DNA of 64,000 nucleotides from Thalia democratica. Its lineage: Eukaryota. This document shows, one piece after another, positions 18,533 to 52,700 of the stretch. How positions within the stretch are numbered: the first letter of the stretch is position 1; every line of letters starts with the position of its first letter. A program made the translations under genes and the position numbers. The notes beneath the pieces are model-generated. The model did not search any database. It was not told where the DNA came from and saw only the letters and a list, made by a program, of their open reading frames with translations. The stretch covers positions 15,314,001 to 15,378,000 of the forward strand of contig OZ241827.1 in assembly GCA_965202585.1 (NCBI GenBank), read 5' to 3'.

Positions 18533-18544
18533 TTTTCCCCTCTT
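18533..18544 (-). promoter_or_regulatory. Polypurine tract AAGAGGGGAAAA
   Basis: Purine run directly abutting the 3' LTR start (TGTAAC) on the minus strand. Confidence 0.8.
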
Positions 18545-19540: not shown

Positions 19541-19849
19541 CTAAACAGGAGACAACCAAAACTCAATGCAATATAGAAAATTTTAGATTTTTATATAAAA
19601 TATCACACAGTACCTATTTTAGCTAAGATAATTACAAAAAAAAATACATGTCTATAAGATACCAATTTTTAATGGTTGTACAAATAAATATAAAATCAAA
19701 AACCCCATTAATTTTAAAATTAAAAAAATTCTTAAAGTTAAGTCATTTAACAGTAATATAAAAAATGCAAGCAGCTTCTAGGTATTGTACAAAATAATCA
19801 GTGAAAATCAACTGTTGCTTATTTGAATAAGCCCTTAAGTAGTATTCAT

Positions 19850-23807: not shown

Positions 23808-26410
23808 CCATAAAATAAAGTCATAATTAATATTCAACAACTGTTGACTATGTTTAATTTAAAATATTACAATGTTTTTAATATATAAACTATCTTTGAA
23901 ATATAACTTTAGTATTTGAAAAAAAATTATGATTAACCAACACTTGTTATAATGTTATAGCTTTTACACTGACACCTATATTCGTAGTTAGTTAATAAAT
24001 TTAAAGTAGCTTGGAGGAATTGAGTTTATAATTAATGTTAAATTTTTATATTACAGATTTAAATTTGTTTTAAATAAACATCACTAGTCTAGTTGATTCT
24101 AAATTATTATACAGCTTGAAATTACTGTTTAGTATATAGTATTTAAATTAAATAAAACACATATGTAACTGTTTAACATAATTCAAATTTTATTATTTAT
24201 AGATTTTTTTAAATTTTAAAATGGCTTTAAGCATTGAAATGCTATTTGATGCTGTTTCTTGTGAGAATGTGGTGAATTTCGAGTTATAAAAAACTTTACT
24301 ACCACAAAAACGAGAACGGCTAAAGCTATATAATTTTTAAATTTAATTTAAAGTAGAAATGAGTAACTGTATTAATTATTAATTAGGTTAAAAAAAAACG
24401 CTTTAAAATTTTTAGTATAAAGAAATATTTAAACTTAATTGATCGCTGGTTGTTTGATAATATATTAGGTCATGAAATTGTAAAGTTTTGAAGGTTTTAT
24501 AGTTTCACTTCAAAAGAACTTTTAAATAGAACGAAAAGTTTGAGTCGCTTATTGACATAAATACATTTAGTTTATTCCAAAATATAAATTACTCAATAAT
24601 ATTTACAAAAACAATTAATTAACTTTATATATTTCAAATGTTTATTAGTTATTTTTGTATATTTAATATTAGATAATTACTTTTTTAAATAGTTTATGAG
24701 TTGGGGAGTGTTATTTTTAATTTAAAACTAAAAGTATAAAACTTTATCGACAATATGTTATATAAATGCATACATATTTTTATTTTAAATTAGTAGCAGA
24801 AAAAATGTTTAAAATTTCAAAGAATAAATATCATACAAAACTTTATGAAACATTATGTTCTAACGAAGTATTTTTAGACTTATTTCTATATTATACCAGC
24901 TAAAATGAATTAATTTCTGTTAAATACAACAAATTTTAATTTTGTATAAAAATGTATGCGTTAAACCAAAAAATCTAAAATGTTTTATAAAAGTTTTATA
25001 AATTTATTAAGCTGATATTTACTTATTCAGTTTTGAAACTACGAAAAGTTTAAGTTTTTATTTTTACGTTAAGTTTGTTATAAAGTTTTTAAAATAAGTT
25101 TTACAGCCCCTTTTTTTTATTTATATACGTTAAGATATCTATTCTAAAAACATTGTTGAAGTATTAAAAAAAGTAGTAATGTAGTAAAAACAAAACTTTA
25201 CAACCTTTACAGTCAATAAGTAATTTTTACAACTACACTATGTGGCATAAAATATTTTCATAATATTTTATTTTTAATGCGTAAGTTTTAGCATACTTTT
25301 ATAAATTTATTTTAGCAGTTTACAAAGTGTTTTAAAGAAATACTTAATTATTTTTTATAAATAAGTATTTTTTAAATGTGTTATAAAAGTAAATACAAAA
25401 AGTTTGTAAGTTTTCTTAAACTTTACCGAAGCTTATTCTTAGATTGCATATATACAAAAAAACAAACTACTAGACTAAAATACTTTGGAATATTGCTTAA
25501 AAAAGTTTAAAAGTTAAAAAGTTGTACTGTAGTACACATATTTTTATGAAGTTCTAAAATCAAACCCGTTTAATATGAAAATAATTGGTTCGAAAATAAA
25601 AATTAAACCTATAGAACTGAATTATTTTTATCACCAGCTTAGAATTTTAGCTTTTAATTTTTTTATGTTTGTTTATGTCAAATAAACAAACTTTTGTCTA
25701 ATAAGTATTTGATAATAAAATGTTTACTCATCAACAAACATAATTACCAAAACTAGTTAATTTATAATAAGAAACAATTTTAATTTTTAATTTTGGATTT
25801 AAGTAGTTAAATTTTAATCTTTGAATAAACAGCTTTTTTACTTACTATTAAAAACAAGTTTTGTTTAAAAATAACATTTATAATAAAAACAAACTTGTTC
25901 TAACAAGATTAACGTTTAATAATTGTTTTAAGCATGGTTTTAAATTAACAGTTTATTTGTTTGTTTTAAGTTGAATAAAAATTTGAAAGCTTAAAAAATA
26001 CTTGCTTGCTATCATTAAGTTCTATTTTTGGTTGTTTTAGTATTTTAGTAAATTTTGAAAAACATTAAACTAATGAAATCTTTATTTTATTTAAGTAAAA
26101 GTTTTTAACAGTGTTATACTGTACAACCAATTAACATTGTGACTTCTAAAAATATATCATTGTTAGAAACAAACGTAAAACCAAATGTTATCTAATAAAA
26201 ACTTAATATACATTGACAAGTAATAATTATTAAAAAACTGTTATTAAATAAGTTCACAAACAAAACATTAAATATTAGAGAATTAGAAGAATTCAATCTA
26301 ATCTAAGAACTATATTGATTATTTTAACAATAGAACCTGTTTAATGTACATCTTGAAAAAACAAACCTTAAAAAACTTAAACATGAAAGTCAGAAAAAAT
26401 ACAAACAGAA

Positions 26411-26623
26411 TCAAATATCTATAGTGAACTTATTTCCATTCCAGTTTACTTGTCCACAATTGTGGTCCCTCTCCCTAGAATCAGCGTACTCTTTACTTGA
26501 TATGTTCATGTCGTTGTAGTACTCACCTATTCCTCTGTAGTCTTTATGAAACTTCTCGTTTTTGGTGTAGTCGTCTTTTTGCGACAAATCACAGTTTATC
26601 CACTTTTGCAAGCCGTTTGACAT
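26411..26623 (-). CDS. 70-aa orphan microprotein, copy A
   Basis: ATG-to-TGA ORF, GC-richer than its flanks, intact in all three units, with an upstream TATA box. Confidence 0.7.
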   Translation of the reverse strand: MSNGLQKWINCDLSQKDDYTKNEKFHKDYRGIGEYYNDMNISSKEYADSRERDHNCGQVNWNGNKFTIDI

Positions 26624-26674
26624 GCTTGTACAATTGATGTGTGAAAATATGCCAAGTTTACTTTTCGTTTTTGG

Positions 26675-26682
26675 CTTTTATA
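26675..26682 (-). promoter_or_regulatory. TATA box TATAAAAG of microprotein gene A
   Basis: Consensus TATA about 31 nt upstream of a CA initiator-like site. Conserved in B and C. Confidence 0.6.
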
Positions 26683-29600
26683 CCTTTTATCATGAAATTT
26701 TTCCTGCTAATATTAAACAATAACATGTTTTTTATTCAAAACTGAAATCAATACCAATTATGCTCAATGAGCACTTCTTATAAAAAATTGTTTGTATTTT
26801 TTAGTTAAAAGGAAGTTTAACCTGTTGATCAAAGAAACTTGAGCCTATATGAACTTTGTGAAACCTTACTTATTGTTTTTTATGCTTAGTTTTGTGACTT
26901 TTGTACAAATGTATGCAAAGTATATTTTTCAATATATTTTTTATATATATATTGTTGATATATGTTTTTTTGTTCTTGTTTTTTGTATTTACAGTAATAT
27001 GTGAGGTAATTGCAATTGAAAAAAACAAGTTCATTCATAAAGTTCAAACAAGGTTTGACGCTTTGATCATATAAAAACTTAAAATTTAGACCCTTTTTTT
27101 AAATAAATTGTTTTTTTTTGATTTTAAATTTTTTGCCGTTACGTTTTTTTGTTATCAATAAAAAAAATTAATAGTTGTAAAAATGTGTTAACAATTTTTT
27201 GTTTAACTTGATGATTAAACCAACTTGTTGTCATATGAACTTTGTAAAACACAGAAAATTCTTTTTGATGTAGTTTTGTTTTCGTGTTTGATGTTTAAAA
27301 GGTTCAAAGTTTTGTTTCAGTCATTGATTTATACTTGTTTGAAATGTTTTCCTATTAATAATAATATGTTTGTTAATTAAAATTACAAAAGTACCTATAG
27401 TCGTATAAACCTTGGTTGTATTACAAACTAAAACCTTGTTTTGATATAATTTTTTGTGGCTAATATGTAAGAAAATGCAATGTTATTTTTTTTTTTATAC
27501 TTTTATGTTGTCATTTTTTAGTTGTTGAAGTTATATGTTAAGAAATGTTTTTGTTGTTGTGATACTTAAATGTTTTTAATATTAGGTTCAAAGAAAGTAA
27601 GATCTGATGGTCAAAGCAGCTTGTTGTCGAATGAACTTTGTATAACATGAGTAGTTGTTTTGTTTTCTTACAAATTGCTAAATGTGTTTTCTTTTTATAT
27701 CCTGTTTTGCAACTTATTGTTTATAATTGTTGTTATATAATACTATTTATTCAAAAGTACATTTCAAACATTGAATGAGTTCTCAAACATAAACTTGCTT
27801 TAAAATAACTTTTGATGTAGGATAATGTTTGAATAAAATTACAATAACCAATAAAAACTTATTTTTTGTTGTAAAGTTTAAACGTAAGATCAAAGTCACA
27901 AATTTTTGACTTCTTTTATCCACTAAATGATACTTTTCTAAAAATATAAAAAAAACTTTTATACAAATCATTGAATTAAATAATTTGTTACTTTTATCTT
28001 CTGTGAAGTTTACGAAAAAAATATTATTTTCTTTTGTAAAAAACTATTTAAGTAAATAAAAAGATTGGTAAATTTAAATTAGTAAACATCATAAGCGAAA
28101 TTTTTGGAATGTTTTTATTTTAATCAAATTATTTTTTTATAAAACTTTTACTAGGTAGAATAATACATCAGAACTTTATTCTGTTTTGTTGTTAGTTTTT
28201 GTTCTTAGTAAATTTTCTATTATAAACTAAAACAACTACTTTGAACTCACTAAAAGATATTTTATTGCTGCTTGAAATTCAACATAAATAAAGCTAATGA
28301 TAAGCATACTTTAAACATCTTAATTACAATTTTCTCGTGTTTTTCTATAAAAACTAATAAAAAATCTCATGTAAAACTAACTAACAATTTCATTGATTTA
28401 AAATTCATTTAACATTAAAAGTAATCAATTTTTTTTTTCAGCAAACTGATATTTAAACAGACATATGTATAAATATTCAATAATTTCGTAACTTCAATTT
28501 GAGTTCTATTTTGTGTTCAAATTGCGAATCTATCGGTAAGTAAAATAATAAAAAACATGTCAGTTTTGAACGAAATTTGAGTCAAAATGTGCACATAAAA
28601 ATAAATAAATGTAACATTGTTTGTTATAATAAAAACTATTTTTTCGAAAGTAAAGAGATAATAGTTTGTAAAAAAGTTTGTTTTGTTTATATTATAAATA
28701 CTTACGTTTATATGCACTTTTAAAAGCTATTCCCGTGTTAAGCAATAAACAGTTATATAACGTTTGGTTTAACATAATTCGTAAGTTTTTAGAAATATTA
28801 AAATATTAAACACGTAACAAAAGTTTTTTTATTTCAAAACGGTGCTGATTTAAAAAACCATTTATGTAATAAATGACTAATGCTGTTTACAATATCAGGT
28901 TGTTTTAAATATGGTACAATAAATTACTATTTGATGTTTTATACTTGTTTAAACAGCCTTATACAATTATATAAGAGTCAAAACTAACCATTTAAAGTAC
29001 TTCGTTAATTAAATTTGTTAACTGTACTGAAAAAAATAAAGCTATTTGTTTCACCATCTAAAATTATTAAATTATGAGAAATGAATATAAAAGACTAAAA
29101 AAGATAGTTTAAGAAACTGTTCTAATAACTTCAAATAAAATATTTATAACAGCTTTTGATTGTTTTACTTGATTTACTTTTTCGAGAAATTAAAACAACC
29201 CAAAGCGTCTAAAGTTCAAAACTCTGGTTTGGTTACATGTTGCTCTTCTGTTTACAATTAAATACTTGGTAGTTATTTAAACCCTCAGCAATAACTATTT
29301 ACTTCATTTTAATTTAAGAATGTAAATTAATTTATAGTCTTTTGTAGGTTCACTATTAAATTTATTAGATACTTGTACTTTCAATTGCAAACTAGACAGA
29401 CATAAAAAACACTTGTTTTAATTACTTTTTATTTATAAAGCTACACTGTTTGTATAATTTGTGGTTGTAGTTACTTCCAACAACACATCCTAATTTTAAG
29501 AATATAAAAATCATCTCTAATAATTTTAAAATAAATTCATAGCCAAACGCATAATCATAGTAATTTATAAACTCATGTTTTTAAAATTTAGTCAGTACAG

Positions 29601-30491
29601 CAAACTAAAATATAGATTTTCTGCTGTCCGAATTTAAAGACTTGTTTAAGTAAATGCAAAATCAAACAACTAATAAAACAAAGATATGTTTGCATATGTC
29701 ACAAGAAACGTTTACAGCAACACTTTAAAAAAACTATTTATAAGTAGTAAATCAAATTACAAATAAATGCGCTTCATACATCATTAAACAATAACAAGAA
29801 AAATAGTATACATAGATCAACTTGGATGATAAATTTGTCAAATAGTTTTTTATAAAATAACTTTTGGAACAAAAAACTCAAAACACAACAATAACTGTTA
29901 CAAATGACGCTGGCAAAATACTTTATAAAAAAATGTTTTATTTGCAATAGTCATTAGAAAAATATAAATTGCCTACTCACTCAGTTGGCTATAAAAATAA
30001 ACGTCCACTAACTTTTAATTAAAGCATTGCAGCTGTATGCAATAAAAAAACACAACAAGTTATAAGTTGAGGTGTAGTAAATTTTATCTAAGGTAATTAA
30101 CTTGCATAAACCACATAAACAAAAAAACTTGGTTGCATGAACCAATGAAAAAAATAATGCCTGCTATATCAATTGACTATAAATTGAACTGCAAACATCA
30201 AAGTTAATGCTTTAACTAAAATCTCAAAAAAATTGCAGATGAAACTGATTTTAGTAAAAATTTCTGAAAATGTCACAAAAAATAAATTATTGGAATAATT
30301 ACTTTCCTAACGGGACCCAAGCCCAATGCACAGATAATATAAAAAATAAAAAGCCTACGTAGGCAATTGATTGCAAAGTGCACTGCGAAGTATCAAAATT
30401 GTACAAAACCTCATACAAGTTGCAGGCGCAGATGATTGTAGTAAATACTTCCTGATTAATTCAGCACCAAAAAATTACATGATTGAAACAT

Positions 30492-33267
30492 TCACTTTCC
30501 AAGCGGAACTCCGGCACCAATGTTGACCATCACCACGTACCTGATCTTGATCTTGCCCACTTCGTAGATGGCGTACTCGTCGAAGTTTACCAGGTAGTTG
30601 TCAACTTTGTTCATGTCCTTCATGGGACCGACTTCCATGTCTATGCCGTCCAATTTGACGCACCTACCCTAGTTTTGGTACCTGACAAATGTGTGAATGT
30701 CATTTAGTATTTTTATTTAATTAATTTAAGTTTACCTATAAAAACTCTGGGTTTTACTTAAAAAATAAAGACTAAATGTGCTAAAAATTAACAGTTATTA
30801 ATTAAAAGTTTATGATATTAAGCTACAAACTAGAGTTTTGTTACCTCTCACTGTTATTATGGATGTAATCATAACTTTAAAGTTCCTTACATTATTTAGT
30901 CTTACAATTTGTAGACTTAAATGACTTTAAAACGTAAAACAATGTTTCTCTTAAATATTGAAGTAAAATTTTTTGCACCTGCCAACAGTGTGAACGATTT
31001 TACTTTGGGGGGTTTTTCTCTCCGGCCAATACCATCTTTCCTGGACCATCTTGACATCAGTGTTACTTACATCAACTTCGCACAAGAGCAGGATACCCGG
31101 CCACATCTATCATAAATAACTAAAGAGTTATACTCGGCTCAAATAAATTTCAAAGGCTATATACTAAAAATAAACTCACAAATTCTATGTTGTTTAAGCT
31201 TTTCGTACCAATGATATACAACAAAAAGAACACAGGAGCAAATTACCTTTTTTTTATACAGAGCTAAAATTATTTAAATTATTTCGTTAGTAATGACACT
31301 TTAATGATTTTTTAATTGACATACAATATCTTAGCAATGCAAGTAAATTAAGTAGATGAGCTAATTAGATTTCAAGATTAAATAAAACCACCTTTTCTAT
31401 GGCACTACCTAGTGCCGCGTTGCAGTACTTGGACGCCTTCGAAGCGCAAGGTGTGAAGTATACAGCTTGTCCGTGAAGCTGCCCCCTAGTGGTCGGAATG
31501 CTGAACCCTCTGCGGAGTATGCCCGGCACGCAAGTCGAGTTGGTACCGTGCCAAAGAAGAAGAGGTTTCGGGTCTGGTGCTAATTTCAGGTTTGGAACAA
31601 CATTCTTATCATGAAAAGAAAGATTTTGATCAAAATTTTTAGATGAATTACGATCTTCAAGCAGAGATTTTGGAGCTGTATCCTGATTTGCAGCTGGAAC
31701 TGATTTCCATGCGGAGGCTGGTTTCTGAACAGCGGATTTTTTCTGTTGCAGTGCCAGTTTCTCAACTGAAGCTGACTTAAGACTTACAGCCGGGTTTCGA
31801 GCTGGATCTGGTTTCTGATCTTGAGCTAGATCCTGATCATCAAAAGAGAACACCTTGTCCACATTCAATTCAAACTTATGGTTTGGTGCGTGTGTAGTCC
31901 ACACTGCAGTTTCGATTATCTTGAACACTTCAGTTCCCTCTTCAATATGACGCAAGCGTGATGGGAAATCGTTGTTGACACCTTCTATAAAATCCAGACG
32001 GTTCAACTCGCTACTGAGCTTTATGTAGTTGTTTATGGGAATGGTGTATTTATTGAACGTCCAGCAGGGTATTAGAGTGTAAAATGCGGAACTCAAGCGT
32101 GGTAACTTGCTTTTTCGGATATCCCTCAAACACTTCATTACGTCAAAAAGAGTTTTTCTGGCCTCGTTAACCTGCTCGATAGGCATTCCAGACCACAAAC
32201 GCCTGAACTCCGCGGGGGCTGAACTGAAGCTTTTCGATCAGTTTCCGCTGCACAATTTTAATAACTCTTTGACCTGAGAACTCATTTGAGTCGAAGTCAA
32301 AGTATTTTGAATGGCGAGCATTGAATGCCAACGAGTGGCTGTAAAAGCGATTTACTCCACTCGTAAATCTCTGCCAACCGTGTTTTAGTCCCTCATTTGG
32401 CCAGTCTACGTTCACAGCCAGCTTAAACTTTTTCTCGAAATGCTCTATGGCAGCATTGATGGTGCTGTACTTACACACGGTGACTTCTGTGGTCGTGTGC
32501 TGGCTTCTGTGGTAGACAAAGAAACTACAGGATTTACAAGGTTAGTGGTACAGATGACCTAGCAAACAAATCTTCTTGGCAAGCAGCTGCAATACGATCA
32601 TTTCATTCTCGTCAAGAAAATGTGCTGAGGAAAATGTCGTTATGGTCAGACAGACGCTCATACTGACACCATCCACACTCAATACGACCAGATCTTTGTT
32701 GGAATTCCAAACCTTGTCGTTGCTCAAACTTAATATTCTATTTTGGTGGGTCTGATTCAGTTTTAGAGAGGTTTGATTTAAAATTCTGTTTTGGTTATCT
32801 TGACTTACATTTCTCCGTGAGTTAGATTGTGATTTGTCTCTCCATAAATCGGTTTCTCTCACACTTTTTGACTTGTATTGAATCCCTCTCCTCCATAAAT
32901 CGGTTTTTGAGTTGTATCGACTCCCTCTTGTCCATGGATCGGTTTCAATCACACTTTTTGAGTTGTATTGATTTCCTCTTCTCCATGAATAAGTTTGACT
33001 CTGATTACTGTTTGAATTTTTCTTATTGAATCTCCTCCAGACACTGGTCTGATTTCCACTTCTATTTCGGATTGTTTGACCCCAACTTCTAAGTTGACTA
33101 GGAGAATCAGCTTCTTTCAATCCTTGGGTGTGTTGAGTTGAACTTCTGCAAGGACTACTTTGATTTCCACTTCTACTTGGGCTTGGAGATTTAGATTTAA
33201 TTAAACCTGGATTCGTTTTAGTCTGATTTCTTTTTTCTAAACACACCTCAATGTTTTTACCACTCAT
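30492..33267 (-). pseudogene. PARP2/3-like ADP-ribosyltransferase pseudogene, copy A (exons 33267-31392, 31106-30979, 30681-30492)
   Basis: LSSAFYTLIP helical domain, LLWHGTN, AVYF, ILLLCEV and FDEYAIY motifs. Lesions: TAA at ~32542, +1 insertion at ~32285, TGA at 32238-32240, TAG at 30669-30671. Confidence 0.9.
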
Positions 33268-34196
33268 GACTGCCACTTGCAGTTGAAAACGTTTTGGTTT
33301 TTTTTTTATTGAGCTGCATAAAAAGTTTTTTAATTATAATACTAGCGGTTGTGTACACTAAAAAGAGTTAAAACATTGTTTTATAATATGTTATGTCGTA
33401 AGTTATATTTTTTTTACAAAGTCACTACCAGTGTTGCTAGTCTTTGAATCAAAATATATAAAAAAACTGGCTTGAATTTTCAGAAACACTTTTTAAACCT
33501 TTTTAGCTATTTCTTATCAGACATGGAAGCAATATTTGATGGAAGGAGTATTTAAGCTAAATTCTACTCAAAATTTTATGTAAAATATAGCTTATTTTAG
33601 ATAAATCATAGCTAAGGCATTTTACTTCAGAAACTAGATAGCTTTTACAAAAAAAAAAATCTCTATTGAATTCAAACTTAGGTTAAACATTGTGATCAAA
33701 GGTAAAGGATTAGGTAGAATATAGTGTGTTTTTTACATTAAAATAAATTCTACTATTAATAAATTCATATGTGTGACCTAATGGTGTACGGCAAAACTTC
33801 CAACGTTTTTGAATATGTAAGTTATTTACTTGTGACCACTAGCTTGTTAAAGTCTCGTTACTATCTGGTTACTGTTAGGGTCCTAATGAGAGCTTAATAA
33901 CTTAATAACTTTTGTTTTACAATTTAACAAACAAAACATTAACAGTCAGGAATTTAGAAAAAATGCCATTGTAATCAAATATCCAAATTGAACACACTTA
34001 GTAAGTTATAAAACATGTTATATTAAACATAAAATAACAAGGAAATTAGAAACATATGCTTTTGTAACCAAATATTTATATTAAACTAATTTTTTAAAAA
34101 CTAACTGAAGTTTTACAGTACAACTTCTTTAATGTACATCTTGATAAAATAAACTTTACAAAGTTAAAAAAGAAGGCAGAAAATTTACAAACACAA

Positions 34197-34409
34197 TCAA
34201 ATATCCATAGTGAACTTATTTCCATTCCAGTTTACTTGTCCACAACTGTGGTCCCTCTCCCTAGAATCAGCGTACTCTTTACTTGATGTGTTCATGTCGT
34301 TGTAGTACTCACCTATCTCTCTGTAGTCTTTATGAAACTTCTCGTTTTTGGTGTAGTCGTCATTTTGCGACAAATCACAGTTTATCCACTTCTGCAAGCC
34401 GTTTGACAT
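34197..34409 (-). CDS. 70-aa orphan microprotein, copy B
   Basis: Same features as copy A. Intact. Confidence 0.7.
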   Translation of the reverse strand: MSNGLQKWINCDLSQNDDYTKNEKFHKDYREIGEYYNDMNTSSKEYADSRERDHSCGQVNWNGNKFTMDI

Positions 34410-34460
34410 GCTTGTACAATTGATGTGTGAAAATATGCGAAGTTTACTTTTCGTTCTTTG

Positions 34461-34468
34461 CTTTTATA
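34461..34468 (-). promoter_or_regulatory. TATA box of microprotein gene B
   Basis: cttttata on the plus strand, same spacing as in A. Confidence 0.6.
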
Positions 34469-37400: not shown

Positions 37401-38408
37401 ATTTTAAGAATATAAAAATCATCTCTAATAATTTTAAAATAAATTCATAGCCAAACACATAATCATAGTAATTTATAAACTCATGTTTTTAAAATTTAGT
37501 TAGTACAGCAAACTAAAATATAGATTTTCTGCTGTCCGAATTTAAAGACTTGTTTAAGTAAACGCAAAATCAAACAACTGATAAAACAAAGATATGTTTG
37601 CATATGTCACAACAAACGTTTACAGCAACACTTTAAAAAAACTATTTATAAGTAGTAAATCAAATTACAAATGAATGCGCTTCATACATCATAAAACAAT
37701 AACAAGAAAAATAGTATACATAGATCAACTTGGATGATAAATTTGTCAAATAGTTTTTTATAAAATAACTTTTGGAACAAAAAACTCAAAACACAACAAT
37801 AACTGTTACAAATGACGCTGGCAAAATACTTTATAAAAAAATGTTTTATTTGCAATAGTCATTAGAAAAATATAAAAAAATTGCCTACTCAGTCAATTGG
37901 CTATAAAAATAATTGTCACGTCCACTTGCTTTTAATTAAAGCATTGCAGCTGTATGCAATAAAAAAACACAACAAGTTATAAGTTGAGGTGTAGTAAATT
38001 TTATCTAAGGTAATTAACTTGCATAAACCACATAAACAGAAAAACTTGCTTGCATTAACCAATGAAAAAAATAATGCCTGCTATATCAATTGACTATAAA
38101 TTGAACTGCAAACATCAAAGTTAATGCTTTAACTAAAATCTCAAAAAAATTGCAGGTGAAACTGATTGTAGTAAAAATTTCTGAAAATGTCACAAAAAAT
38201 AAATTATTGGAATAATTACTTTCCTAACGGGACCCAAGCCCAATGCACAGATAATATAAAAAATAAAAAGCCTACGTAGCCAATTGATTGCAAAGTGCAC
38301 TGCGAAGTATCAAAATTGTACAGAACCTCATACAAGTTGCAGGCGCAGATGATTGTAGTAAATACTTCCTGATTAATTCAGCACCAAAAAAATACATGAT
38401 TGAAACAT

Positions 38409-41188: not shown

Positions 41189-42830
41189 GACTGCCACTTG
41201 CAGTTGAAAACGTTTTTGAATTTTTTTTTAATTGACCTGCACAAAAAAACTTTTTAAATTATTAAATTTTTATACTAGCGTTTGTGTACACTAAAAAGAG
41301 TTAAAACATTGCTTTATAATATGTTATGTCATAAGTTGTAATTTTTTTTACAAAGTCACTACCAGGGTTGCTAGTCTTTGGATCAAAATAAATAAAAAAC
41401 TAAATGAATTTTCAGAAACCCTTTTAAAACCTATTCAACTATTTATTATTAAGACATGGAAGCAATATTCGATGGAAGGAGTTTTTAAACTAAACTATAC
41501 TCAAAATTTTATGTAAAATATAGTTTTTTTATAGATTAATCATAGATAAGGCTTTTTACTTCTGAAACTACATAGCTTTAAAAAAAAAAAAAAAAACTCT
41601 ATTGAATCTAAACTTAGATAAAACATTGTGATTAAAGGTAAAAGATTAGGTAGAATATAGTGTGTTTTTTACATTAAAATAAATTCTTCTATTAATAAAT
41701 TCATATGTGTGACCTAATGGTGTACAGCAAAACTTCCAACGTTTTTGAATATGTAAGTTATTTACTTGTGGCCACTAGCTTGTTAAAGTCTGGTTGCTAT
41801 CTGGTTACTGTTAGGGTCTAAATGAGATCATCTAAACCTCTCTGAGTTGAACATCGCAATATTGAAAACATATAGTCAATACATATACAAAACATAGGTC
41901 TCAAAACTTTTGTAAAGTTTAGACTTCCTATAAAATTTTAAACCTAAAGTTTAACAATGTTTGTTCTTAATGATTTTACAAAAGCAAACACTATGACCAT
42001 AAAAATATCAATTATTATAATAATTTAAGTGATAAAATATAAATCTTAAAAACATTTTGTGTATAGTACTTCAAATCATACTGAGGTTCAATAAAAAAAA
42101 CAATTAAGAAAAGTACTTTAGTGTGTATGATATTCTTTAAATTATAAAATTTGTTAAATTATAAAAATCAAAATTATGTTATTTTAGAATTGATAAAATT
42201 TTTAAGACTTCTGATAGTATTAAGTATTCAATTAAGTACTTATAACTAGCACCATTAAATTATTGAGCTTTAAATATTTCCATTTACACAAATACAATTT
42301 TTTGATTACACATAAAAAGCATGCAAACATTGAACACGTTATTTCATTTTTATATTCGTTTTCATATTTATCTATAGTTTTATTTTCAAACTCGTATAAT
42401 ACCAGGGATTAAAAGTGTATTTTTGTAACTAACAACATTTAAAGTTTCAAAGATACAATTATAACTGGTGGAAACTAAGTAGAATAAGTGTTTTTTGATA
42501 AAAACTTTAAAAACTTTGACTTACATTCATAATTTAATAACTTTAGTTTTACAATTTCACAAACAAAACATTAACAGTCAGAAATTTAGAAAAATATGCC
42601 ATTGTAATCTGATATCCAATTTAAACACATTTAAATAAATTATAAAACATGTTATATTAAACATAAAATAACCAGAAAATTAGAAATGTATGCTTTTGTA
42701 ACCAAGTATTTATATTAAACTTATTTTTTAAGAACTAACTGAAGTTTTACAGTACAACCTGTTTAATGTACATCTTGATAAAATAAACTTTACAAAGTAA
42801 AAAAAGAAGGCAGAAAATTTACAAACACAA

Positions 42831-43043
42831 TCAAATATCCATAGTGAACTTATTTCCATTCCAATTTACTTGTCCACAATTGTGGCCCCTCTCCCTAGAA
42901 TAAGCGTACTCTTTACTTGATATGTTCATGTCGTTGTAGTACTCACCTATCTCTCTATAGTCCTTCTGAAATTTCTCGTTGTTGGTGTAGTCGTCATTTT
43001 GCGACAAATCGCAGTCTCTCCACTTCTGCAGGCCGTTTGACAT
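42831..43043 (-). CDS. 70-aa orphan microprotein, copy C
   Basis: Intact. Versus B I count 6 synonymous and 8 non-synonymous changes. Confidence 0.7.
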   Translation of the reverse strand: MSNGLQKWRDCDLSQNDDYTNNEKFQKDYREIGEYYNDMNISSKEYAYSRERGHNCGQVNWNGNKFTMDI

Positions 43044-43093
43044 GCTTGTACAATTGATGTGTGAAAATATGCAAGTTTACTTTTCGTTTTTGG

Positions 43094-43101
43094 CTTTTAT
43101 A
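43094..43101 (-). promoter_or_regulatory. TATA box of microprotein gene C
   Basis: cttttata conserved at the equivalent position. Confidence 0.6.
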
Positions 43102-46100
43102 CCTTTTATAATCAAGTGTTTCCTGCTAATAATAAACAATAACATGTTTTTTATTCAAAACTGAAATCAATACCACTTGTGCTCAATGAGCACTTCTCAT
43201 AAAAACTTGTGTGTTCTTTTTAGTTCAAAGAAAGTTTAACTGTTGATCAAAGCAAATTGAGCCTATATGAACATTTTAAAGCCTTGTTTATTGTTTTTGA
43301 TGTTTAGTTTTGTGACTATTGTACAAGTGTATGCAAAGTATGTTTTTCAATATATTGTTTTTATATATACTGATGATAGATGTTTTTTTGTTTTTGTTTT
43401 TTTTATTTACAGTAATATGTAAGGTAATTGCAATTAAAAAAAAACAAGTTCATTCATAAAGTTGAAACAAGGTTTGACTCTTTGATCGTATAACTATGTA
43501 AAATAAAAATTACTAGTTTTTTGCTGAGCTGCTTTATTTTGAATTTAAATTTTTTATCGTTACGTGTTTTTAATCAGTAACAAAATATTTTAAGAGTTGT
43601 AAATGTGTGTCAATAAAATTTTTGTATATTTTGATGATCAAAGCAACTTTTGGTCTTGTGAAAATTGTAAAACAGTGATATTTTTTCGTGATGTTTTTTT
43701 TCGTGTTCGATATTTTAAAAGGCTCAAAGTTTTGTTTTCCGTCTTTGTTTTATAGTTATTTGACATGTGTTTCCTTTTGTTGTAATAATAACATATGATA
43801 TTATAATATAATGTAATAACAAGTATATGTAATAAACATAACATTATTATAATAATATGTTTGTTAATTGTTATTACAAAAAACCATAGTAACTTATTGT
43901 CGTATGAACCTTGATTGTTTTACAAACTAAAACCTTGTTTTGATGTAATTTTTTGTGGCTAATATATAAAAGAATGCAAAATTGAAGTTTTATTTTTTCT
44001 TTTAATATTTTATGATGTCATTTTTTAGTAGTTGAAGTTAGATGTTAAGAAATGTTTTGTTGTTGTGATACTTAAATGTTTTTGATACTAACTTCAAAGG
44101 AAGTTTGATCTGATGATCAAAGCAGCTTGTTGTCGAATGAACTTTCTATAACATACATACTTACAAATTACTAAAAGTGTTTTGTTTTTATATCCTGTTT
44201 GCATTAATTTAAATTATAATACTATTTATTCAGAAAGTACATTTTAAACATTGAATAAGTGTTCAAATATAAACTCGTTAAAAAATAATTTTTTATGTAG
44301 GATAATGTTTGAATAAATTAACAATAACGAAAAAAATTTTTTTGTCGTAAAGTTTCAACGTTAAATCAAAGTCTATAAGTTTATGACTTCTTTTATCCAC
44401 TAAATGATACTATTCTAAAAACGTTTAAAAAAACTTTTAAACTAAGTCATATATTTCAAAGCTTATATTTTTTGTTACTTTTATCTTCTGTGGAATTTAC
44501 AAAAAAAAAACTTTGTTGTTCTCTTGTAAAAAATTATTTAAGCAAATAAAAAGATTGGTAAACTTAAATAAGTAAACATCATAAGTGAAATGTTTGAAAT
44601 GTTTTTATTTTAACCAAATTATTTTTTATAAAATTTTTACTAGGTTGAAATACATCAGAACTTTATTGTTTTTGTTCTTAATTGTTGTTAATTTTGTTCT
44701 TAGTATAATTTATTACATACTAAAACAAAAAAGTATTACATTGAACTTGCTAAAAGATATTTTATTGCTGCTTAAAATTCAAAATAAATAAAGTTAATGA
44801 TAATCTTACTTTAAACAACTTTATTACACGTTTATCGTGATTTTCAATACAAAACTAATAGAAAATCTCATGCGAAACTAATGAACAATTTCATTGATTT
44901 ATAAATCATATAACATTAAAAGTAAACAAACACAATTTTTAAGCAAACTGATATTTAAACAGACATATATATAAATATACAATAACTACGTAACTTTAAG
45001 TTGATATCTATTTGGTGTTTAAATTTCGAATCTATTGGTCAAGTTAAATAATATAAGGACAAGAAATCTCAGTTTGAACAAAACTTCGAGTCAAAGTGTG
45101 CACATAAAATAAATAAATGTAACATTGTTTGTTATTTAAAAAACTCTTTTTTCGAAAGTAAAGAGATAATAGTTTGTAAAAAAGTTTGTTTTGTTTATAC
45201 TATACATACTTACATTTATATGCACTTTTAAAAGCTTTTCCCGTGTTAAGTAATAATTATTTATATAACATTTGATTTAACTTAATTCGTAAATTTTTAA
45301 AATTATAAAAAAATTTAATACATAACAAAAGTATTTTTATTTCAAAACGGTGCTGATTAAAAAAACCATGTATGTAATAAATGACTAATGCGGTTTACAA
45401 TATTAGGTTGTTTTAAATATAATACAATAAATTACTTTTTGATGTTTTATACTTGTTTAAAAAGCCTTATATAATTATATAAGAGTCAAAACTAACCACT
45501 AAAGTACTTTGTTAATTAAATTTGTTAACTGTTCTGATAAAGTTATTTGTTTCACCAATTAAAATTGTTAAATTAATATAAATAAACATATACGATTAAA
45601 AAAGATAGTTTAAGAAACTTTTTTAATAACTTCAAAAAAATCAAAAAAATATTTATAACAGCTTTTGATGGTTTCACTTGATTTACTTTTTCGAGAAATT
45701 AAAACAACCTAAAGCGTCTAAAGTTAAGAGCTCTGGTTTGGTTACATGTTGCTCTTCTATTTACAATTAAAAACTTAGTAGTTATTTAAACCCTCAGCAA
45801 CAACTATTTACTTCATTTTAATTTAGGAATGTAAATTAATTTTAAGTCTTTTGAAGGTTCACTATTAAATTTATAAGATATTTGTACTTTAAATTACAAA
45901 CTAGACAGACATAAAAAACACTTTTGTTATAAATCCTTTTTATTTATAAAGCTACACTGTTTGTATAATTTGTGGTTGTAGTTACTTCCAACAACACATC
46001 GTAATTTTTAGAATATAAAAATCATCTCTAATAATTTTAAAATAAATTCATAACCAAACACATAATCATAGTAATTTATAAACTCAAGTTTTTTAAAATT

Positions 46101-47010
46101 TAGTTAGTACAGCAAACTAAAATATAGATTTTCTGCTGTCCGAATTTAAAGACTTGTTTAAGTAAATGCAAAATCAAACAACTAATAAAACAAAGATGTG
46201 TTTGCATATGTCACAAGAAACGTTTACAGCAACACTTTATACAAACTATTTATAAGTGATAAATCAAATTACAAATAACTGCGCTTCATACATCATAAAA
46301 CAATAACAAGAAAAATAGTATACATAGATCAACTTGGATGATAAATTTGTCAAATAGTTTTTTATAAAATAACTTTTGGAACAAAAAACTCAAAACACAA
46401 CAATAACTGTTACAAATGACGCTGGCAAAATACTTTATAAAAAAATGTTTTATTTGCAATAGTCATTAGAAAAATATAAATTGCCTACTCAGTCAATTGG
46501 CTATAAAAATAATTGTCACGTCCACTAACTTTTAATTAAAGCATTGCAGCTGTATGCAATATAAAATACAACAAGTTATAAGTTGAGGTGTAGTAAATTT
46601 TATCTAAGGTAATTAACTTGCAAAAAAAACCATATAAACAAAAAAACTTGCTTGCATAAACCAATGAAAAAAATAATGCCTGCTATATCAATTGACTATA
46701 AATTGAACTGCAAACATCAAAGTTAATGCTTTAACTAAAATCTCAAAAAAACTGCAGGTGAAACTGATTGTAGTAAAAATTTCTGAAAATGTCACAAAAA
46801 ATAAATTATTGGAATAATTACTTTCCTAACGGGACCCAAGCCCAATGCACAGATAATATAAAAAATAAAAAGCCTACGTAGGCAATTGATTGCAAAGTGC
46901 ACTGCGAAGTATCAAAATTGTACAGAACCTCATACAAGTTGCAGGCGCAGATGATTGTAGTAAATACTTCCTGATTAATTCAGCACCAAAAAATTACATG
47001 ATTGAAACAT

Positions 47011-49775
47011 TCACTTTCCAAGCGGAACTCCGGCACCAATGTTGACCATCACCACGTACCTGATCTTGATCTTGCCCACATCGTAGATGGCGTACTCGTC
47101 GAAGTTTACCAGGTACTTGGCAACTTTGTTCATGTCCTTCATGGGACCGACTTCCATGTCTATGCCGTCCAATTTGACGCACCTACCCAAGTTTTGGTAC
47201 CTGACAAATGTGTGAATGTCATTTAGTATTTTTATTTAATTAATTTAAGTTTACCTATAAAAACTCTGGGTTTTACTTAAAAAATAAAGACTAAATGTGC
47301 TAAAAATTAACAGTTATTAATTAAAAGTTTATGATATTATGCTACAAACTAGAGTTTTGTTACCTCTCACTGTTATTATGGATGTAATCATAACTTTAAA
47401 GTTCCTTACATTATTTAGTCTTACAATTTGTAGACTTAAATGACTTTAAAACGTAAAACAATGTTTCTCTTAAATATTGAAGTAAAATTTTTTGCACCTG
47501 CCAACAGTGTGAACGATTTTACTTTGGGGGGTTTTTCTCTCCGGCCAATACCATCTTTCCTGGACCATCTTGACATCAGTGTTACTTACATCAACTTCGC
47601 ACAAGAGCAGGATACCCGGCCACATCTATCATAAATAACTAAAGAGTTATACTCGGCTCAAATAAATTTCAAAGGCTATATACTAAAAATAAACTCACAA
47701 ATTCTATGTTGTTTAAGCTTTTCGTACCAATGATATACAACAAAAAGAACACAGGAGCAAATTACCTTTTTTTTATACAGAGCTAAAATTATTTAAATGA
47801 TTTCGTTAGTAATGACACTTTAATGATTTTTTAATTGGCATACAATATCTTAGCAATGCAAGTAAATTAAGTAGATGAGCTAATTAGATTTCAAGATTAA
47901 ATAAAACCACCTTTTCTATGGCACTACCTAGTGCCGCGTTGCAGTACTTGGACGCCTTCGAAGCGCAAGGTGTGAAGTAGACCGCTGGTCCGTGAAGCTG
48001 CCCCTAGTAGTCGGAATACTGAACCCTCTGCGGAGTATGCCCGGCACGCAAGTCGAGTTGGTACCGTGCCAAAGAAGAAGAGGTTTCGGGTCTGGTGCTA
48101 ATTTCAGGTTTGGAACAACATTCTTATCATGAAAAGAAAGTTTTTGATCAAAATTTTTGGATAAATTACGATCTTCAAGCAGAGATTTTGAAGCTATATC
48201 CTGATGTGCAGCTGAATCTGATTTCCATGCGGAGGCTGGTTTCTGATCAGCGGATTTTTCAGTTGCAGTGCCAGTTTCTCAACTGAAGCTGGCTTAAGAC
48301 TTACAGCAGGGTTTCGAGCTGGATCTGGTTTCTGATCTTGAGCTAGATCCTGATCATCAAAAGAGAAAACCTTGTCCACATTCAACTCAAACTTATGCTT
48401 TGATGCGTGTGTAGTCCTCACTGCAGTTTCGATCATCTTGAACACTTCAGTTCCCTCTTCAATATAACGCAAGCGTTTTGGAAATCGTTGTTGACACCTT
48501 CTATAAAGTCCAGACGGTTCAACTCGCCACCGAGCTTTGTGTAGTTGTTTATGGGAATGGTGTATTTGTTGAACGTCCAGCAGGGTATTAGAATGTAAAA
48601 TGCGGAACTCAAGCGTGGTAACTTGCTTTTTCGGATATCCCTCAAACACTTCATTACGTCAAAAAGAGTTTTTCTGGCCTCGTTAACCTGCTCGATAGGC
48701 ATTCCAGACCACAAACGCCTGAACTCCGCGGGCGCTGATTCAAATTTGCTTGGTGGGTTTCCATTGCACAATTGTAACAGCTCTTTGACTTGGGAACTCG
48801 CCGAGTCGAAGTCAAAGTTTTTTGAATAGCGAGCATTGAATGTCAACGAGTGGTTGTAAAAGTGATTTACGCCACTCGTAAATCTCTGCCAACCGTGTTT
48901 TAGTCCCTCCTTTTGCCAGTTTACATTCACAGCCTGCTTAAACTTTTTCTCGAAATGCTCTATGGCAGCATTGATGGTGCTGTACTTACACACGGTGGCT
49001 TCTGTGGTCGTGTGCTGGCTTCTGTGGTAGACAAAGAAACTACACGTTTTACAAGGTTGGTGGTACAGGTGACCTAGCAAACAATTCTTCTTGACAAGCA
49101 GCTGCAAAACGGTCATTTGATTCTCTACAAGAAAACCTGCTAAGGAAAATGTCGTCTTGGTCAGACAGACGCTCATACTGACACCATCTACACTCAATAC
49201 AACCATATCTTTGTTTGAATTCCAAACCTTGTCGTTGCTTAAACTTAATATCCTATTTTGATTGGCCTGATTTAGTTTTGGAGAGGTTTGATTTAAAGTT
49301 CTGTTTTGATTATTTTGACTCTTATTTCTCCATGAGTTAGATTGTGATTTGTTTCTCCATAAATCGGTTTCTCTCACACTTTTTGAGTTGTAATGAATCC
49401 CTCTCCTCCATAAATCGGTTTTTGAGTTGTATCGACTCCCTCTTTTCCATGGATCGGTTTCACTCTTTTTTTTGAGTTGTATTGATTTCCTCTTCTCAGT
49501 GAATAAGTTTGACTCTGATTACTGTTTGACTTTTTCTTATTGAAGCTCCTCCAGACACTGGTCTGATTTCCACTTCTATTTCGGATTGTTTGACCCCAAC
49601 TTCTAAGTTGACTAGGAGAATCAGCTTCTTTCAATCCTTGGGTGTGTTGAGTTGAACTTCTGCAAGGACTACTTTGATTTCCACTTCTAATTGGGCTGTG
49701 AGATTTAGATTCCATTAAACCTGAATTTGTTTTAGTCTGATTTTCTAACCACTCATCAATGCTTTTACTATTCAT
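47011..49775 (-). pseudogene. PARP2/3-like gene, copy C (exons 49775-47911, 47625-47498, 47200-47011); four 1-bp deletions
   Basis: Deletions in homopolymer runs at ~49466-49473, ~48480, ~48257 and 48001-48004 (the last is shared with B). No nonsense substitutions noticed. Exon 3 is intact with FDEYAIY. Confidence 0.85.
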
Positions 49776-52700
49776 GACTGACACTTGCAGTTGAAAACGT
49801 TTTTGAATTTTTTTTTTTAATCGAGCTTCATAAAAAAACTTTTTAAATTATTAAATTATTATACTAGCGTTTGTGTACACTAAAACGAGTTAAAACATTG
49901 TTTTATAATATAATATATAATAAGTTAAAATTTGTTTTACAAAGTCCCTACCAGGGTTGCTAGTCTTTGAATCAAAATCAATAAAAAAACTGGCTGGAAT
50001 TTTTAGAAACCCTTTTAAAACCTATTTAGCTATTTCTTAATAAGACATGGAAGCAATAATTGATGGAAGTAGTTTTTAAACTAAATTCTACTCAAAATTT
50101 TATGTAAAATATAGTTTTTTATAGATTAATCATAGCTAAGGCATTTTACTTCAGAAACTACATAGCTTTCACAAAAAAACTCTATTGAATTCAAACGTAG
50201 ATGAAACAACATTGTGATTAAAGGTAAAGGATTAGGTAGAATATAGTATGTTTATTACATTAAAATAAATTAGACTATTAATAAATTCATATGTGTGACC
50301 TAATAATGTAGGGCAAAACTTCCACCGTTTTTGAATATGTAAGTTATTTACTTGTGGCCACTAGCTTGTTAAAGTCTGGTTACTACTGGGTTACTGTTAG
50401 GGTCCTAATGAGAGCATTTAAACCTCTCTGAGTTGAACATCGCAATATTGAAAACCTTTAGTCATTACATATACAAGAATAGGTCTCAAAACTTTTGTAA
50501 AAATAAGACTTCCTATGAAAATCAAGACTTTAAGTTTAACAATGTTCTTAATGATTTTACAAAAGCAAACACTATGACCATAAAAATATCAATTATTATA
50601 ATAATTCAGGTCATAAGTATAAATCTTAAAAACATTTTATATATATTACTTCGAATCATACAGAGTTAGGTTCAATAAAAAAATAATTAAGAAAAGGGCT
50701 TTAATGTGTATGATATTCTTTAAATTATAAAACTTAAAGTTATGTTATTTTAAAATCAATAAAATTTTTAAGACTTCTGATAGAATTAATATTTAATTAA
50801 GTACTTATAACTAGCACCATTAAATTGAATAGCTTTAAATATTTCTATTTACACAAATACAATTTTTTGATTACACATAAAAAGCATGTGAGCATTGAAC
50901 ACGTTATTTCATTTTTATATTCTTTTTCATATTTATCTCCAATTTTATTTTCAAACTCGTATAATACCAGGGATTAAAAGTGTATTTTTGTAACTAACAA
51001 CATTTAAAGTTTCAAAGATGTTAATTTAACTTATGTTACTTAATTCATGTTAATTAAAAATGTATTTCCTATAAATATCTTCTTGAAGCAATGTTTAATA
51101 CATACAACGGTGCCTTTATTTCTATTTACTGTACGTTAAGATCACAGTTACCAGAATTTATGAAATTAAAAACTCTGAAAACTGAATAAACTGAGTAGTA
51201 TGTTTTAACTTAAAGTATGTTGATCTAGTAAATGTGTGGCGACTTTTTCATAAAACCTTTTATAAAGTTTTCAGTGGAAAGCAGGGCTACCATTATTAGA
51301 GTTTTTGTAAATCTTGCAGTTTTAAACAATTTGATTATTTACATTTATTTTTAATGTTGTGAATTTTTTCTTAACATATTAAGTGTAAATAATAAAAGTC
51401 GCTCTAATTTCATCTCTACTGCCGACCCCAAACCAAATTAATTAAGTTAAATTTAAAAAAATATTGCCAATAAAACCGTTTCACAGCTCCAAAAGGTGCT
51501 TAAAAATTTAAAGTATAAAGAAGTACTTATACTGATCGCTTGATACTTTGATACTATTTTAGGTAACTAAAGTGTGAAGTTTTTTAGATTTTTGTTTTTC
51601 ATAATAAAAAAACAAATTTATAAAAGCAAAATTAAAAAAATTTTTTAGTCGTTTATTGATATTGAAAAACTTAGCTTGTTCTAATATATAAATTATTTAA
51701 ATATAGTTACAAATTAGATTAATGAATTTTAAACATTTTATTTGTCTATTAGTCATTTGTTTATAGTTTTGATAAGAGACAAATTGTTTTAAAATATGAT
51801 TTTGAAATTGCTAATTAACTTGCGTTTAATACAAAAACTTTTATTTGTTTTGTATCAATTTGTGTTAAAAAAAAGACATCTAAACATATTTATAATATTT
51901 ATGGAACTCATCAACTTGATATTTAAGTTCAAAGTTTTGAAACAACTAAAGAAGATAAACTTGCTATAAACTTCTTAAAACAATTTTGTTTTTTTTAATT
52001 CAAGCATGGTTTTATTCAAATTTATCTATTGCGGGACAGATTTGCACGTTTGCATTTCACCAATTGCGGGCTACACTTTATGCAGAATAAAAACGATCCT
52101 TGTCTAGCATGAACATTTGAATGCGGATATATATGTGTTGTAAATTATTCTAAATTAAAAAAAAATTAAAAAGCTTTGGATAAAATTAAAACAAGTTGGT
52201 GTCTTAATAACAGCTATGGCCTACTAAATAAATCAGTTATTAAAGTTTCCTAACTTTTACAAATTTACACTAGAAAATATTATAAACAGCACAAACTCGC
52301 TTCTCAGCAAAATTTTAATACTAGATAGAAATATTTTTTCTTTATAATTTTTTCATTTTTATTTTTAATTTAGCTTTACTTTTTACTAAAATCAGTACGC
52401 TATAAACAATAAGATTTTAAACAATAACAACCAATTTTAAAATTATTGAAACAAAAGTTCTTATTTTAGTTTAAATCAAATATACTTACTTTCCTTATTG
52501 AAATAGAAGATTAACAAGTTGTGAACTTGTTCACTTCCTTTACTTTAATAACTCTTTGTAGTGGTGTTTATGGTTTTTTACAATTTAAAAATCGACCATA
52601 TTTTCCTAACAAACAGCATCAAGTAGATGACTAAATGTAGAAGAAATGTGATTTCTATTATTTTATTATAATTTATGAAAAATATTAATGAAACAATTAA

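What the first reader, a model, noticed from the sequence alone, without database searches (positions are those of the whole stretch)
26250..51020. Amplified two-gene cassette: divergent PARP2/3-like ADP-ribosyltransferase plus a co-oriented 70-aa orphan gene, three tandem copies
Seen: each ~8-kb unit carries a 3-exon PARP (degenerate WGR, helical domain, H-Y-E catalytic residues) and, ~3.9 kb downstream on the same strand, an intact TATA-driven microprotein gene. Known: animal PARP1/2/3 are usually single-copy repair enzymes, while expanded fast-evolving PARPs are typically antiviral or stress effectors. Inference: this is a lineage-specific effector-plus-partner module (regulator, reader or antidote) undergoing birth-and-death evolution. 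Passive co-duplication of neighbours is the null model.
Basis: partly seen in the sequence, partly recalled or inferred. Interest (0 to 1): 0.78.

Follow-up and report, generated by a model that had tools for sequence, protein, structure and literature searches.

The report
Triplicated PARP plus small-protein gene segment
An 8-kb stretch carrying a very divergent PARP-type enzyme gene and an unrelated 70-residue protein gene was copied three times in a row; the PARP copies are decaying while the small gene is kept, and nothing shows that the two work together.

Summary
Three head-to-tail units (periods 7.9 and 8.6 kb, minus strand) each carry a three-coding-exon PARP gene and, 3.9-4.0 kb downstream, an intact 70-aa ORF.

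The PARP belongs to a small unnamed family known only from Tara Oceans metagenomes and metatranscriptomes. A 56%-identical relative has a WGR-like fold without the W-G-R signature, a helical domain and an H-Y-E catalytic domain. In this assembly, copy A has three stops and a frameshift, and copy C has four frameshifts. Copy B has a single 1-base loss in a G-run. Contigs of four public runs show only the frame-keeping version there, so B may be alive.

The small ORF is a real gene. It has two distant intact homologues (80% and 41-46% identity), dN/dS of 0.07-0.23, coding-like GC content, and a TATA box conserved in sequence and position. It has no Pfam, PDB or WWE similarity and no confident fold.

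The effector-plus-partner idea is unsupported. A PARP relative has no such ORF within 4.6 kb downstream, a homologue of the small gene sits next to a Sushi-domain exon, and the copies are a gene-conversion mosaic. Passive co-duplication with birth-and-death decay fits best. No RNA data were available.

First-stage notes of this scan on this same window (s1-311292, s1-311463) had already flagged the ORF and the WGR-like domain.

The parts
26250..33950 (-). Repeat unit A (PARP copy A plus small gene A)
   Evidence: Three-way alignment of the units; repeat families D2-D20.
34000..41900 (-). Repeat unit B
   Evidence: Read-derived contigs of runs X1/X2 match B-specific stretches (35070-37074) with 0 differences (table 8).
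42640..50500 (-). Repeat unit C (about 0.7 kb longer than A and B)
30492..33313 (-). PARP copy A, dead. The leader starts after the acceptor AG at 33314. ATG 33267; exon 1 to 31392; exon 2 31106-30979; exon 3 30681-30492. Lesions: TAA at 32544-32542, one extra base at about 32287, a TGA in 'GN*S' about 55 nt further on, and TAG in exon 3 at about 30672.
38409..41236 (-). PARP copy B, the best copy. ATG 41188; exon 1 to 39309; exon 2 39023-38896; exon 3 38598-38409. Its only lesion in the assembly is one base fewer in the G-run at 39400-39403 than in copy A and the relatives.
   Evidence: In one search table 4, every contig of the four runs at 39398 has one more C.
47011..49825 (-). PARP copy C, dead. 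ATG 49775; exon 1 to 47911; exon 2 47625-47498; exon 3 47200-47011. It has 1-base losses near 49468, 48482, 48258 and 48005, the last shared with B.
40754..40913 (-). 51-nt (17-aa) tandem repeat encoding the basic SWRRGNRYNSKSV motif in the PARP N-terminus
   Evidence: Relatives P0006 and P0011 carry longer 'SWRRK' repeats.
26411..26623 (-). Small-protein gene A (70 aa, intact). TATA box about 59 nt upstream of the ATG; ATTAAA 66 nt after the stop.
34197..34409 (-). Small-protein gene B (70 aa, intact)
42831..43043 (-). Small-protein gene C (70 aa, intact)
37534..39529 (-). Homogenised (gene-conversion) tract in B coordinates. It is 94-100% (mostly 98-100%) identical between all copies and spans the end of exon 1, both introns, exons 2-3 and about 0.9 kb of 3' flank.
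   Evidence: 0-16 variable sites per 400 columns here, against 36-74 in the flanks.

Best explanation
An ancestral segment of about 8 kb held two independent, co-oriented genes and was tandemly triplicated. Its copies have since exchanged sequence by gene conversion or unequal crossing-over.

Gene 1 is a lineage-restricted, highly divergent member of the PARP1/2/3 clade. It has a basic W-R-R repeat N-terminus, a WGR-like fold without the W-G-R signature, a helical domain and an H-Y-E ADP-ribosyltransferase domain. It follows birth-and-death dynamics. Copies A and C are pseudogenes. Copy B has one doubtful single-base lesion and may still encode the enzyme.

Gene 2 is a self-contained small gene for a 70-residue hydrophilic protein of unknown fold, with a TATA box, a short leader and an ATTAAA signal. 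It is kept by purifying selection in all three units.

Shown: the repeat, the gene models, the lesions, the selection signals and the homologues. Inferred: that the two genes were merely neighbours when the segment duplicated, and that the small gene has its own promoter.
For: - **Repeat and mosaic pattern:**
- **Lesions:**
- **Copy B's lesion is contradicted by public data:** in each of the four runs the only contig there carries the frame-keeping extra C (table 4).
- **PARP family and architecture:**. PARP1 4dqy_C gives Z 24.0 over model residues 51-518, and PARP2 7aeo_A gives Z 23.8 over 50-519.
- **Long-term constraint on the PARP:** dN/dS is 0.31 against L001 (0.18 in the WGR-like and helical domains), relaxed to 0.55-0.65 within the array.
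- **Small gene:** intact homologues P0007 (80%) and P0009 (46%; 41% in the alignment). dN/dS is 0.07-0.23, with an excess of synonymous changes (P=0.003 for A-C, 3e-8 for C-L007). ORF GC is 0.38-0.41 against 0.22-0.25 in the flanks.
- **Promoter:** similarity to L007 is confined to the ORF, 57 nt upstream including the TATA box, and about 30 nt downstream.
- **No linkage elsewhere:**
Against: - Linkage could be tested on only a few short contigs. The one genomic contig of the closest PARP relative (L001) ends 2.2 kb after the stop, short of where the small gene would lie.
- No RNA data exist, so co-expression is open.
- All three small genes keep the same distance and orientation to a PARP. 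Passive duplication predicts this, and so does a functional pair.
- Depth figures from contigs cannot give copy numbers.
Confidence: 0.68

Rival explanations
1. The PARP is a fast-evolving effector and the 70-aa protein is its regulator, reader or antidote. The pair is amplified as one functional module.
For: The order, orientation and spacing (3.87-4.0 kb) are the same in all three units. dS of the small gene against L007 (0.7-1.0) is similar to dS of the PARP against L001 (0.74), so both genes may also coexist in a second genome or locus. The small gene is preserved.
Against: At least two of the three PARP partners are dead while every small gene is constrained. There is no such ORF within 4.6 kb downstream of the PARP relative in L009, or anywhere in L001-L018. 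The homologue in L008 lies 300 nt after a Sushi-domain exon. There is no WWE, macro or other ADP-ribose-related similarity. Identical spacing is what segmental duplication produces anyway.
Confidence: 0.1
2. The amplification was selected for dosage of the small gene, and the PARP is a hitch-hiker that is being lost.
For: All three small genes are intact and constrained, while the PARPs decay. Summed contig depth over the small gene is about 6 times (X1/X2) and about 19 times (X3) that of single-copy B-specific contigs, and in X3 it exceeds the depth over most of the PARP (tables 2 and 8). Partial extra copies of the ORF ends lie next to the homologues in L007 and L008.
Against: The tool states that contig depth is not a copy number. 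No expression data exist. Within-array PARP dN/dS is still below 1 (P=0.002-0.03), and copy B may be intact.
Confidence: 0.15
3. The 70-aa ORF is a chance open frame, or the triplication is an assembly artefact.
For: The ORF is short, has no known domain and gives a low-confidence fold (pLDDT 44.7). No read-level check of the unit junctions was possible.
Against: The frame is open in five sequences down to 41-46% identity, with conserved start and end, and dN/dS is far below 1. The units differ by 7-15% outside the homogenised tract, with copy-specific indels, which false duplication does not produce. B-specific contigs occur with 0 differences in independent run contigs.
Confidence: 0.04

Closest known systems
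PARP2 / PARP1 / PARP3 (DNA-dependent PARPs with WGR, helical and ART domains)
   Same: The best sequence match of the family's catalytic domain in the PDB is PARP2 (E 1.5e-17), then PARP1 (3e-12) and PARP3 (3e-5). The H-Y-E residues are kept. A model of relative P0002 aligns to WGR-HD-ART chains of PARP1 and PARP2 over residues about 50-519.
   Different: Identity to canonical PARPs is only about 20-28%. Pfam WGR is not detected, PARP_reg is below threshold, and the W-G-R signature is replaced. The N-terminus is made of basic W-R-R repeats. The window copies and P0001 carry an extra low-complexity insert of roughly 90 residues before the His strand. The gene is multi-copy with pseudogenes, whereas PARP1/2/3 are usually single-copy (the last point is established knowledge, not tested here).
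Rapidly evolving, duplicated antiviral PARPs of vertebrates (PARP4, 9, 13, 14, 15; Daugherty et al. 2014, PMC4038475)
   Same: Lineage-specific duplication and loss of PARP genes.
   Different: Those are macro-, WWE- or zinc-finger-type PARPs, not the WGR-HD clade. No positive selection was shown here: dN/dS is below 1 in almost every partition, and the single value above 1 rests on 6 substitutions. No immune context is known.
Other PARP-like expansions noted by this scan in the same genome (double-ART and minimal H-Y-E families; s1-311184, s1-274496 and others)
   Same: Same genome, tandem arrays with intact and decaying copies, unnamed in public databases.
   Different: Those families are described as intron-free and lacking WGR and HD domains. 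This one has introns and WGR-like plus HD domains. I did not compare the sequences.
Two-gene effector/immunity or toxin/antidote modules
   Same: Two co-oriented genes are amplified together.
   Different: The genes are 3.9 kb apart with separate promoter signals. Linkage is not conserved where it could be tested. The presumed effector copies die while the 'partner' is kept.

Membership tests
PARP1/2/3 clade (WGR-HD-ART) | PARP catalytic (ART) domain, Pfam PF00644 | tested here: met
   Copy A gives 8.8e-15 and copy B 8.3e-07 on truncated ORFs. Relatives P0002 and P0006 match the full-length profile, 1e-24 to 2e-26.
PARP1/2/3 clade (WGR-HD-ART) | H-Y-E catalytic triad | tested here: met
   LLLWHGT, GQAVYFT and FDEYAIY in the column-aligned read-through (x at the breaks) of all three copies, aligned to the PARP2 triad through P0002. 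In A and B/C it lies behind lesions.
PARP1/2/3 clade (WGR-HD-ART) | Helical regulatory domain (PF02877) | tested here: inconclusive
   Pfam scores are 15-25 bits, below the 26.8 cut-off. The P0002 model aligns to the HD plus ART of PARP1/2 from residue about 197, Z 22-23.
PARP1/2/3 clade (WGR-HD-ART) | WGR domain (PF05406) with W-G-R signature | tested here: inconclusive
   There is no Pfam WGR hit and the signature is absent. Chains that include a WGR domain align about 100-120 more residues (model 50-196) than CAT-only chains. This was tested on a 56%-identical relative, not on the window protein.
PARP1/2/3 clade (WGR-HD-ART) | Uninterrupted reading frame (working gene) | tested here: inconclusive
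   A and C are clearly broken. B has one 1-base lesion in the assembly, and public contigs do not show it.
PARP1/2/3 clade (WGR-HD-ART) | DNA-break-stimulated poly- or mono-ADP-ribosylation | not testable with these tools
   This needs an enzyme assay.
Functional two-gene module (effector plus partner) | Linkage conserved at other loci or in other genomes | tested here: not met
   No homologue of the small gene was found in L001-L018, including 4.6 kb downstream of the PARP in L009. The L008 homologue lies beside a Sushi-domain exon. The sample is small and the contigs are short.
Functional two-gene module (effector plus partner) | Co-expression | not testable with these tools
   No RNA run holds the stretch.
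Functional two-gene module (effector plus partner) | Partner carries an ADP-ribose-related domain (WWE, macro, PBZ) | tested here: not met
   No Pfam hit at E<=0.1 apart from a chance MobC_2 match. PDB profile search: best E 1.7. hhalign against WWE domains: probability 0.2%.
Tandem segmental duplication with birth-and-death and gene conversion | Head-to-tail units, diverged copies with pseudogenes, mosaic similarity | tested here: met
   The nearest-pair pattern switches along the unit (BC, AC, AB), with a tract of about 2 kb that is almost invariant.

The most novel reading that the evidence does not exclude
The 70-residue protein is a dedicated regulator or antidote of this tunicate-specific PARP family. 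It is kept because it also acts on intact paralogues, including copy B if its frame is really open. The array would then be a eukaryotic enzyme-plus-modulator cassette amplified as a unit.
Probability: 0.07. Interest if true: 0.65.

Novelty: new member of a known kind. Interest (0 to 1): 0.3.

Why it matters
The region adds a documented case of birth-and-death evolution in the PARP1/2/3 clade, which is normally single-copy. The case comes from a planktonic tunicate lineage whose genome already shows several other PARP-like expansions. It also defines two unnamed families for annotation. One is a divergent WGR-like/HD/ART PARP with basic W-R-R repeats, expressed in Tara Oceans metatranscriptomes. 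The other is a conserved 70-residue protein with its own promoter signals. The region does not, on present evidence, reveal a new kind of two-gene system.

Tried and rejected
- **WWE-like half domain in the small protein:** rejected. There is no Pfam hit, and hhalign against five WWE domains gives probability 0.2%.
- **Bacterial hit P0008 (1120 aa):** it matches only residues 31-49 of the small protein, seven times. I take this as a repeat or compositional match, not homology.
- **Structure of the small protein:** pLDDT 44.7, not used for fold search.
- **Metagenome scans:** two scans, one with the small-protein alignment and one with the PARP-family alignment, returned nothing confirmed.
- **Other database look-ups:** the word-based protein search found only P0007. 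The cluster look-up showed only singletons.
- **Rfam:** no RNA family in the window.
- **Further repeat remnants:** no degraded units outside 26.2-50.5 kb.
- **Small ORF as an alternative last PARP exon, or as part of an operon:** rejected. The only AG before its ATG lacks a pyrimidine tract and is absent in L007, and 3.9 kb is far beyond tunicate operon spacing (the latter from general knowledge).
- **Sushi exon in L008 spliced to the ORF:** rejected. The phases do not match (my reading).
- **Depth as copy number:** not used as evidence, following the tool's own warning.
- **Papers:** searches found nothing on tunicate PARP expansions.
Full report

Yes. The repeat finder returns many three-copy families between 26.2 and 50.5 kb, with start-to-start spacings of about 7.8-7.9 and 8.6 kb. 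A three-way alignment shows 85-100% identity over about 7.7 kb per unit. All coding features are on the minus strand. The units run A 33950->26250, B 41900->34000 and C 50500->42640. No further remnants of the unit exist elsewhere in the window. The window has about 23% G+C; the exons and the small ORF stand out as islands of 35-42% G+C.

**2. The PARP gene.**

*Gene model.*
- Six-frame reading and the alignment give three coding exons. In copy A these are ATG 33267 to 31392, 31106-30979 and 30681-30492, with equivalent positions in B and C.
- The exon joins are supported by colinearity with relatives whose coding sequence is uninterrupted. For example, 'GSAIEK|MWPGILLLCEV' matches 'GSGIRMERPGVLLLCEV', and 'VGR|YQNLGRCVKLDG' matches 'VGRYQTSGQVVVDG'.
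- A pyrimidine-rich acceptor lies 46-48 nt upstream of each ATG.
- In two relatives, metatranscriptome contigs begin exactly at the homologous acceptor of the genomic contigs. This fits spliced-leader addition or an upstream non-coding exon. Earlier notes of this scan call the genome a planktonic tunicate with Ciona-type trans-splicing; I did not verify the species.

*Domains.*
- Pfam finds the PARP catalytic domain and a sub-threshold regulatory domain.
- The best PDB sequence match of relative P0002 is PARP2, then PARP1, then PARP3.
- An AlphaFold model of P0002 (pLDDT 72.7) aligns to PARP1 and PARP2 chains that include the WGR domain over residues about 50-519. That is 397-415 aligned residues, against about 295 for catalytic fragments. 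The N-terminal domain is therefore WGR-like in fold, although Pfam WGR and the W-G-R signature are missing.
- The N-terminus is a basic 17-aa tandem repeat, SWRRGNRYNSKSV.
- The window copies and P0001 carry an extra low-complexity insert before the His strand.

*Family.* The family has only eight unnamed clusters at 38-82% identity to P0002, all from Tara Oceans or related marine assemblies. Several occur both in metagenome scaffolds and in metatranscriptomes with intact 516-667-aa frames. The next relatives are canonical PARPs at about 25% identity.

**3. State of the three PARP copies.**

Relative to the frame shared with the relatives:
- Copy A has a TAA at 32544-32542, one extra base near 32287, a further stop shortly after, and a TAG in exon 3.
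- Copy C has four 1-base losses.
- Copy B has a single 1-base loss in a G-run at 39400-39403, shared with C.

I read broken copies only column by column, with x at the breaks.

When contigs of four public runs were laid on 34100-40099, the only contig covering place 39398 in each run carried one more C, which keeps the frame (table 4). No rows appeared at the neighbouring A-specific sites. This suggests, by inference only, that the contig is not simply copy A laid on B. So B's lesion is either an assembly error or a minority allele, and B may be functional. A's three stops are substitutions, not homopolymer-length differences.

**4. Selection and exchange.**

- Against the outside genomic relative L001 (74% nucleotide identity), copy B shows dS 0.74 and dN/dS 0.31, with 0.18 in the WGR-like and helical domains.
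- Within the array, dN/dS is 0.55-0.65. This is relaxed but still below 1.
- The pattern of which two copies agree switches along the unit.
- A tract of about 2 kb (B 39529-37534) is almost invariant among all three copies, introns included. This is a gene-conversion mosaic, not exon-specific constraint.

**5. The 70-aa gene.**

- *Homologues.* The ORF is open in all three units. An exhaustive HMMER search of 1.8 billion representatives found two real homologues. P0007 has 70 aa and 80% identity. P0009 has 75 aa and 46% identity (41% in the MAFFT alignment). Both share the start MSNGLQKW..CDL, the core GEYYND..S..EY and the C-terminal end. Both are singletons on short marine contigs.
- *Selection.* dN/dS is 0.19-0.23 between C and the other two copies, and 0.07-0.13 against L007. 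The excess of synonymous changes is significant.
- *Composition.* ORF G+C is 0.38-0.41, against 0.22-0.25 in the flanks.
- *Promoter and end signals.* Similarity to L007 covers only the ORF, 57 nt upstream and about 30 nt downstream. A TATAAAAG motif keeps its distance to the ATG, 57 nt in L007 and 59 nt in the window. ATTAAA follows the stop by 64-66 nt.
- *What it is.* This looks like a self-contained small gene. The protein has no signal-like N-terminus, no Pfam, PDB or WWE similarity and no confident predicted fold. Its biochemical role is unknown. My best guess is a small soluble, partly disordered cytosolic protein.

**6. Are the two genes a module?**

The available tests say no, but weakly.
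- No homologue of the small gene occurs in any of the 18 fetched loci of PARP relatives. That includes 4.6 kb downstream of the intronless relative in L009. L001, the closest relative, ends 2.2 kb after the stop and is uninformative.
- The distant homologue in L008 lies about 300 nt downstream of a Sushi-domain exon, with a partial extra copy of its own 5' end in between.
- At least two PARP copies are dead while all small genes are constrained.
- Equal spacing in the three units is what segmental duplication produces.
- No RNA run was available, so co-expression is untested.

**7. Verdict.**

The triplication is real and holds a divergent PARP1/2/3-clade gene and an unrelated, conserved small gene. 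The PARP copies show ordinary birth-and-death decay with gene conversion, and one copy is possibly alive. Passive co-duplication is the best-supported explanation (about 0.68). A dosage-driven amplification of the small gene is a variant I cannot exclude (0.15). The effector-partner module remains a low-probability reading (about 0.1). Each gene is a new, unnamed member of a known kind of thing. Interest is modest.

Noticed in passing
window 2831-3324 and 5322-5816: Two 15-nt minisatellite arrays of about 33 copies each, reverse complements of one another and 2 kb apart, with opposite GC skew. They may be the arms of a foldback-type element. The long 'ORFs' on them are repeat artefacts.
   Followed up: partly
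window 17975-23592: GC-rich (47%) retroelement remnant on the minus strand with gag-like and aspartic-protease ORFs (21349-23067, 19850-21352). Inside the second ORF is a 129-nt (43-aa) tandem expansion at 20578-21119. The remnant is flanked by 68-nt tandem arrays at 17975-18326 and 23183-23592 rather than plain LTRs. Observed only.
   Followed up: no
window 11678-12763 (+): A 361-aa ORF with a C-terminal RING-H2-like motif (CIICMD...CHVDHCLCKTC...CPTCR) behind a long 21/42/189-nt tandem-repeat region.
   Followed up: no
window 13679-13924 (-) and 14635-14937 (-): A GIY-YIG-like ORF fragment and a reverse-transcriptase-like fragment, suggesting a decayed Penelope-like element.
   Followed up: no
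L003-L006 and L009-L013 (relatives): Relatives P0004 and P0011 have uninterrupted coding sequences in metagenome scaffolds, while the window gene and L001 have introns in the catalytic domain. L001 has an extra interruption of about 105 nt at 1888-1993. This means intron gain or loss, or retro-copies, within one small family.
   Followed up: partly
L001 3932-4993 vs window 38151-37415 / 30234-29507: About 0.8-1 kb of non-coding sequence, starting roughly 260 nt downstream of the PARP stop, is as conserved (74%) as the coding exons between the window and L001. It also shows raised contig depth in the runs. It could be a long 3' UTR or an embedded repeat; this is unresolved.
   Followed up: partly
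L007 479-559 and L008 383-424: Partial extra copies of the small gene's 3' end (L007) and 5' end (L008) lie beside the intact homologues, so the small gene seems prone to local duplication.
   Followed up: partly
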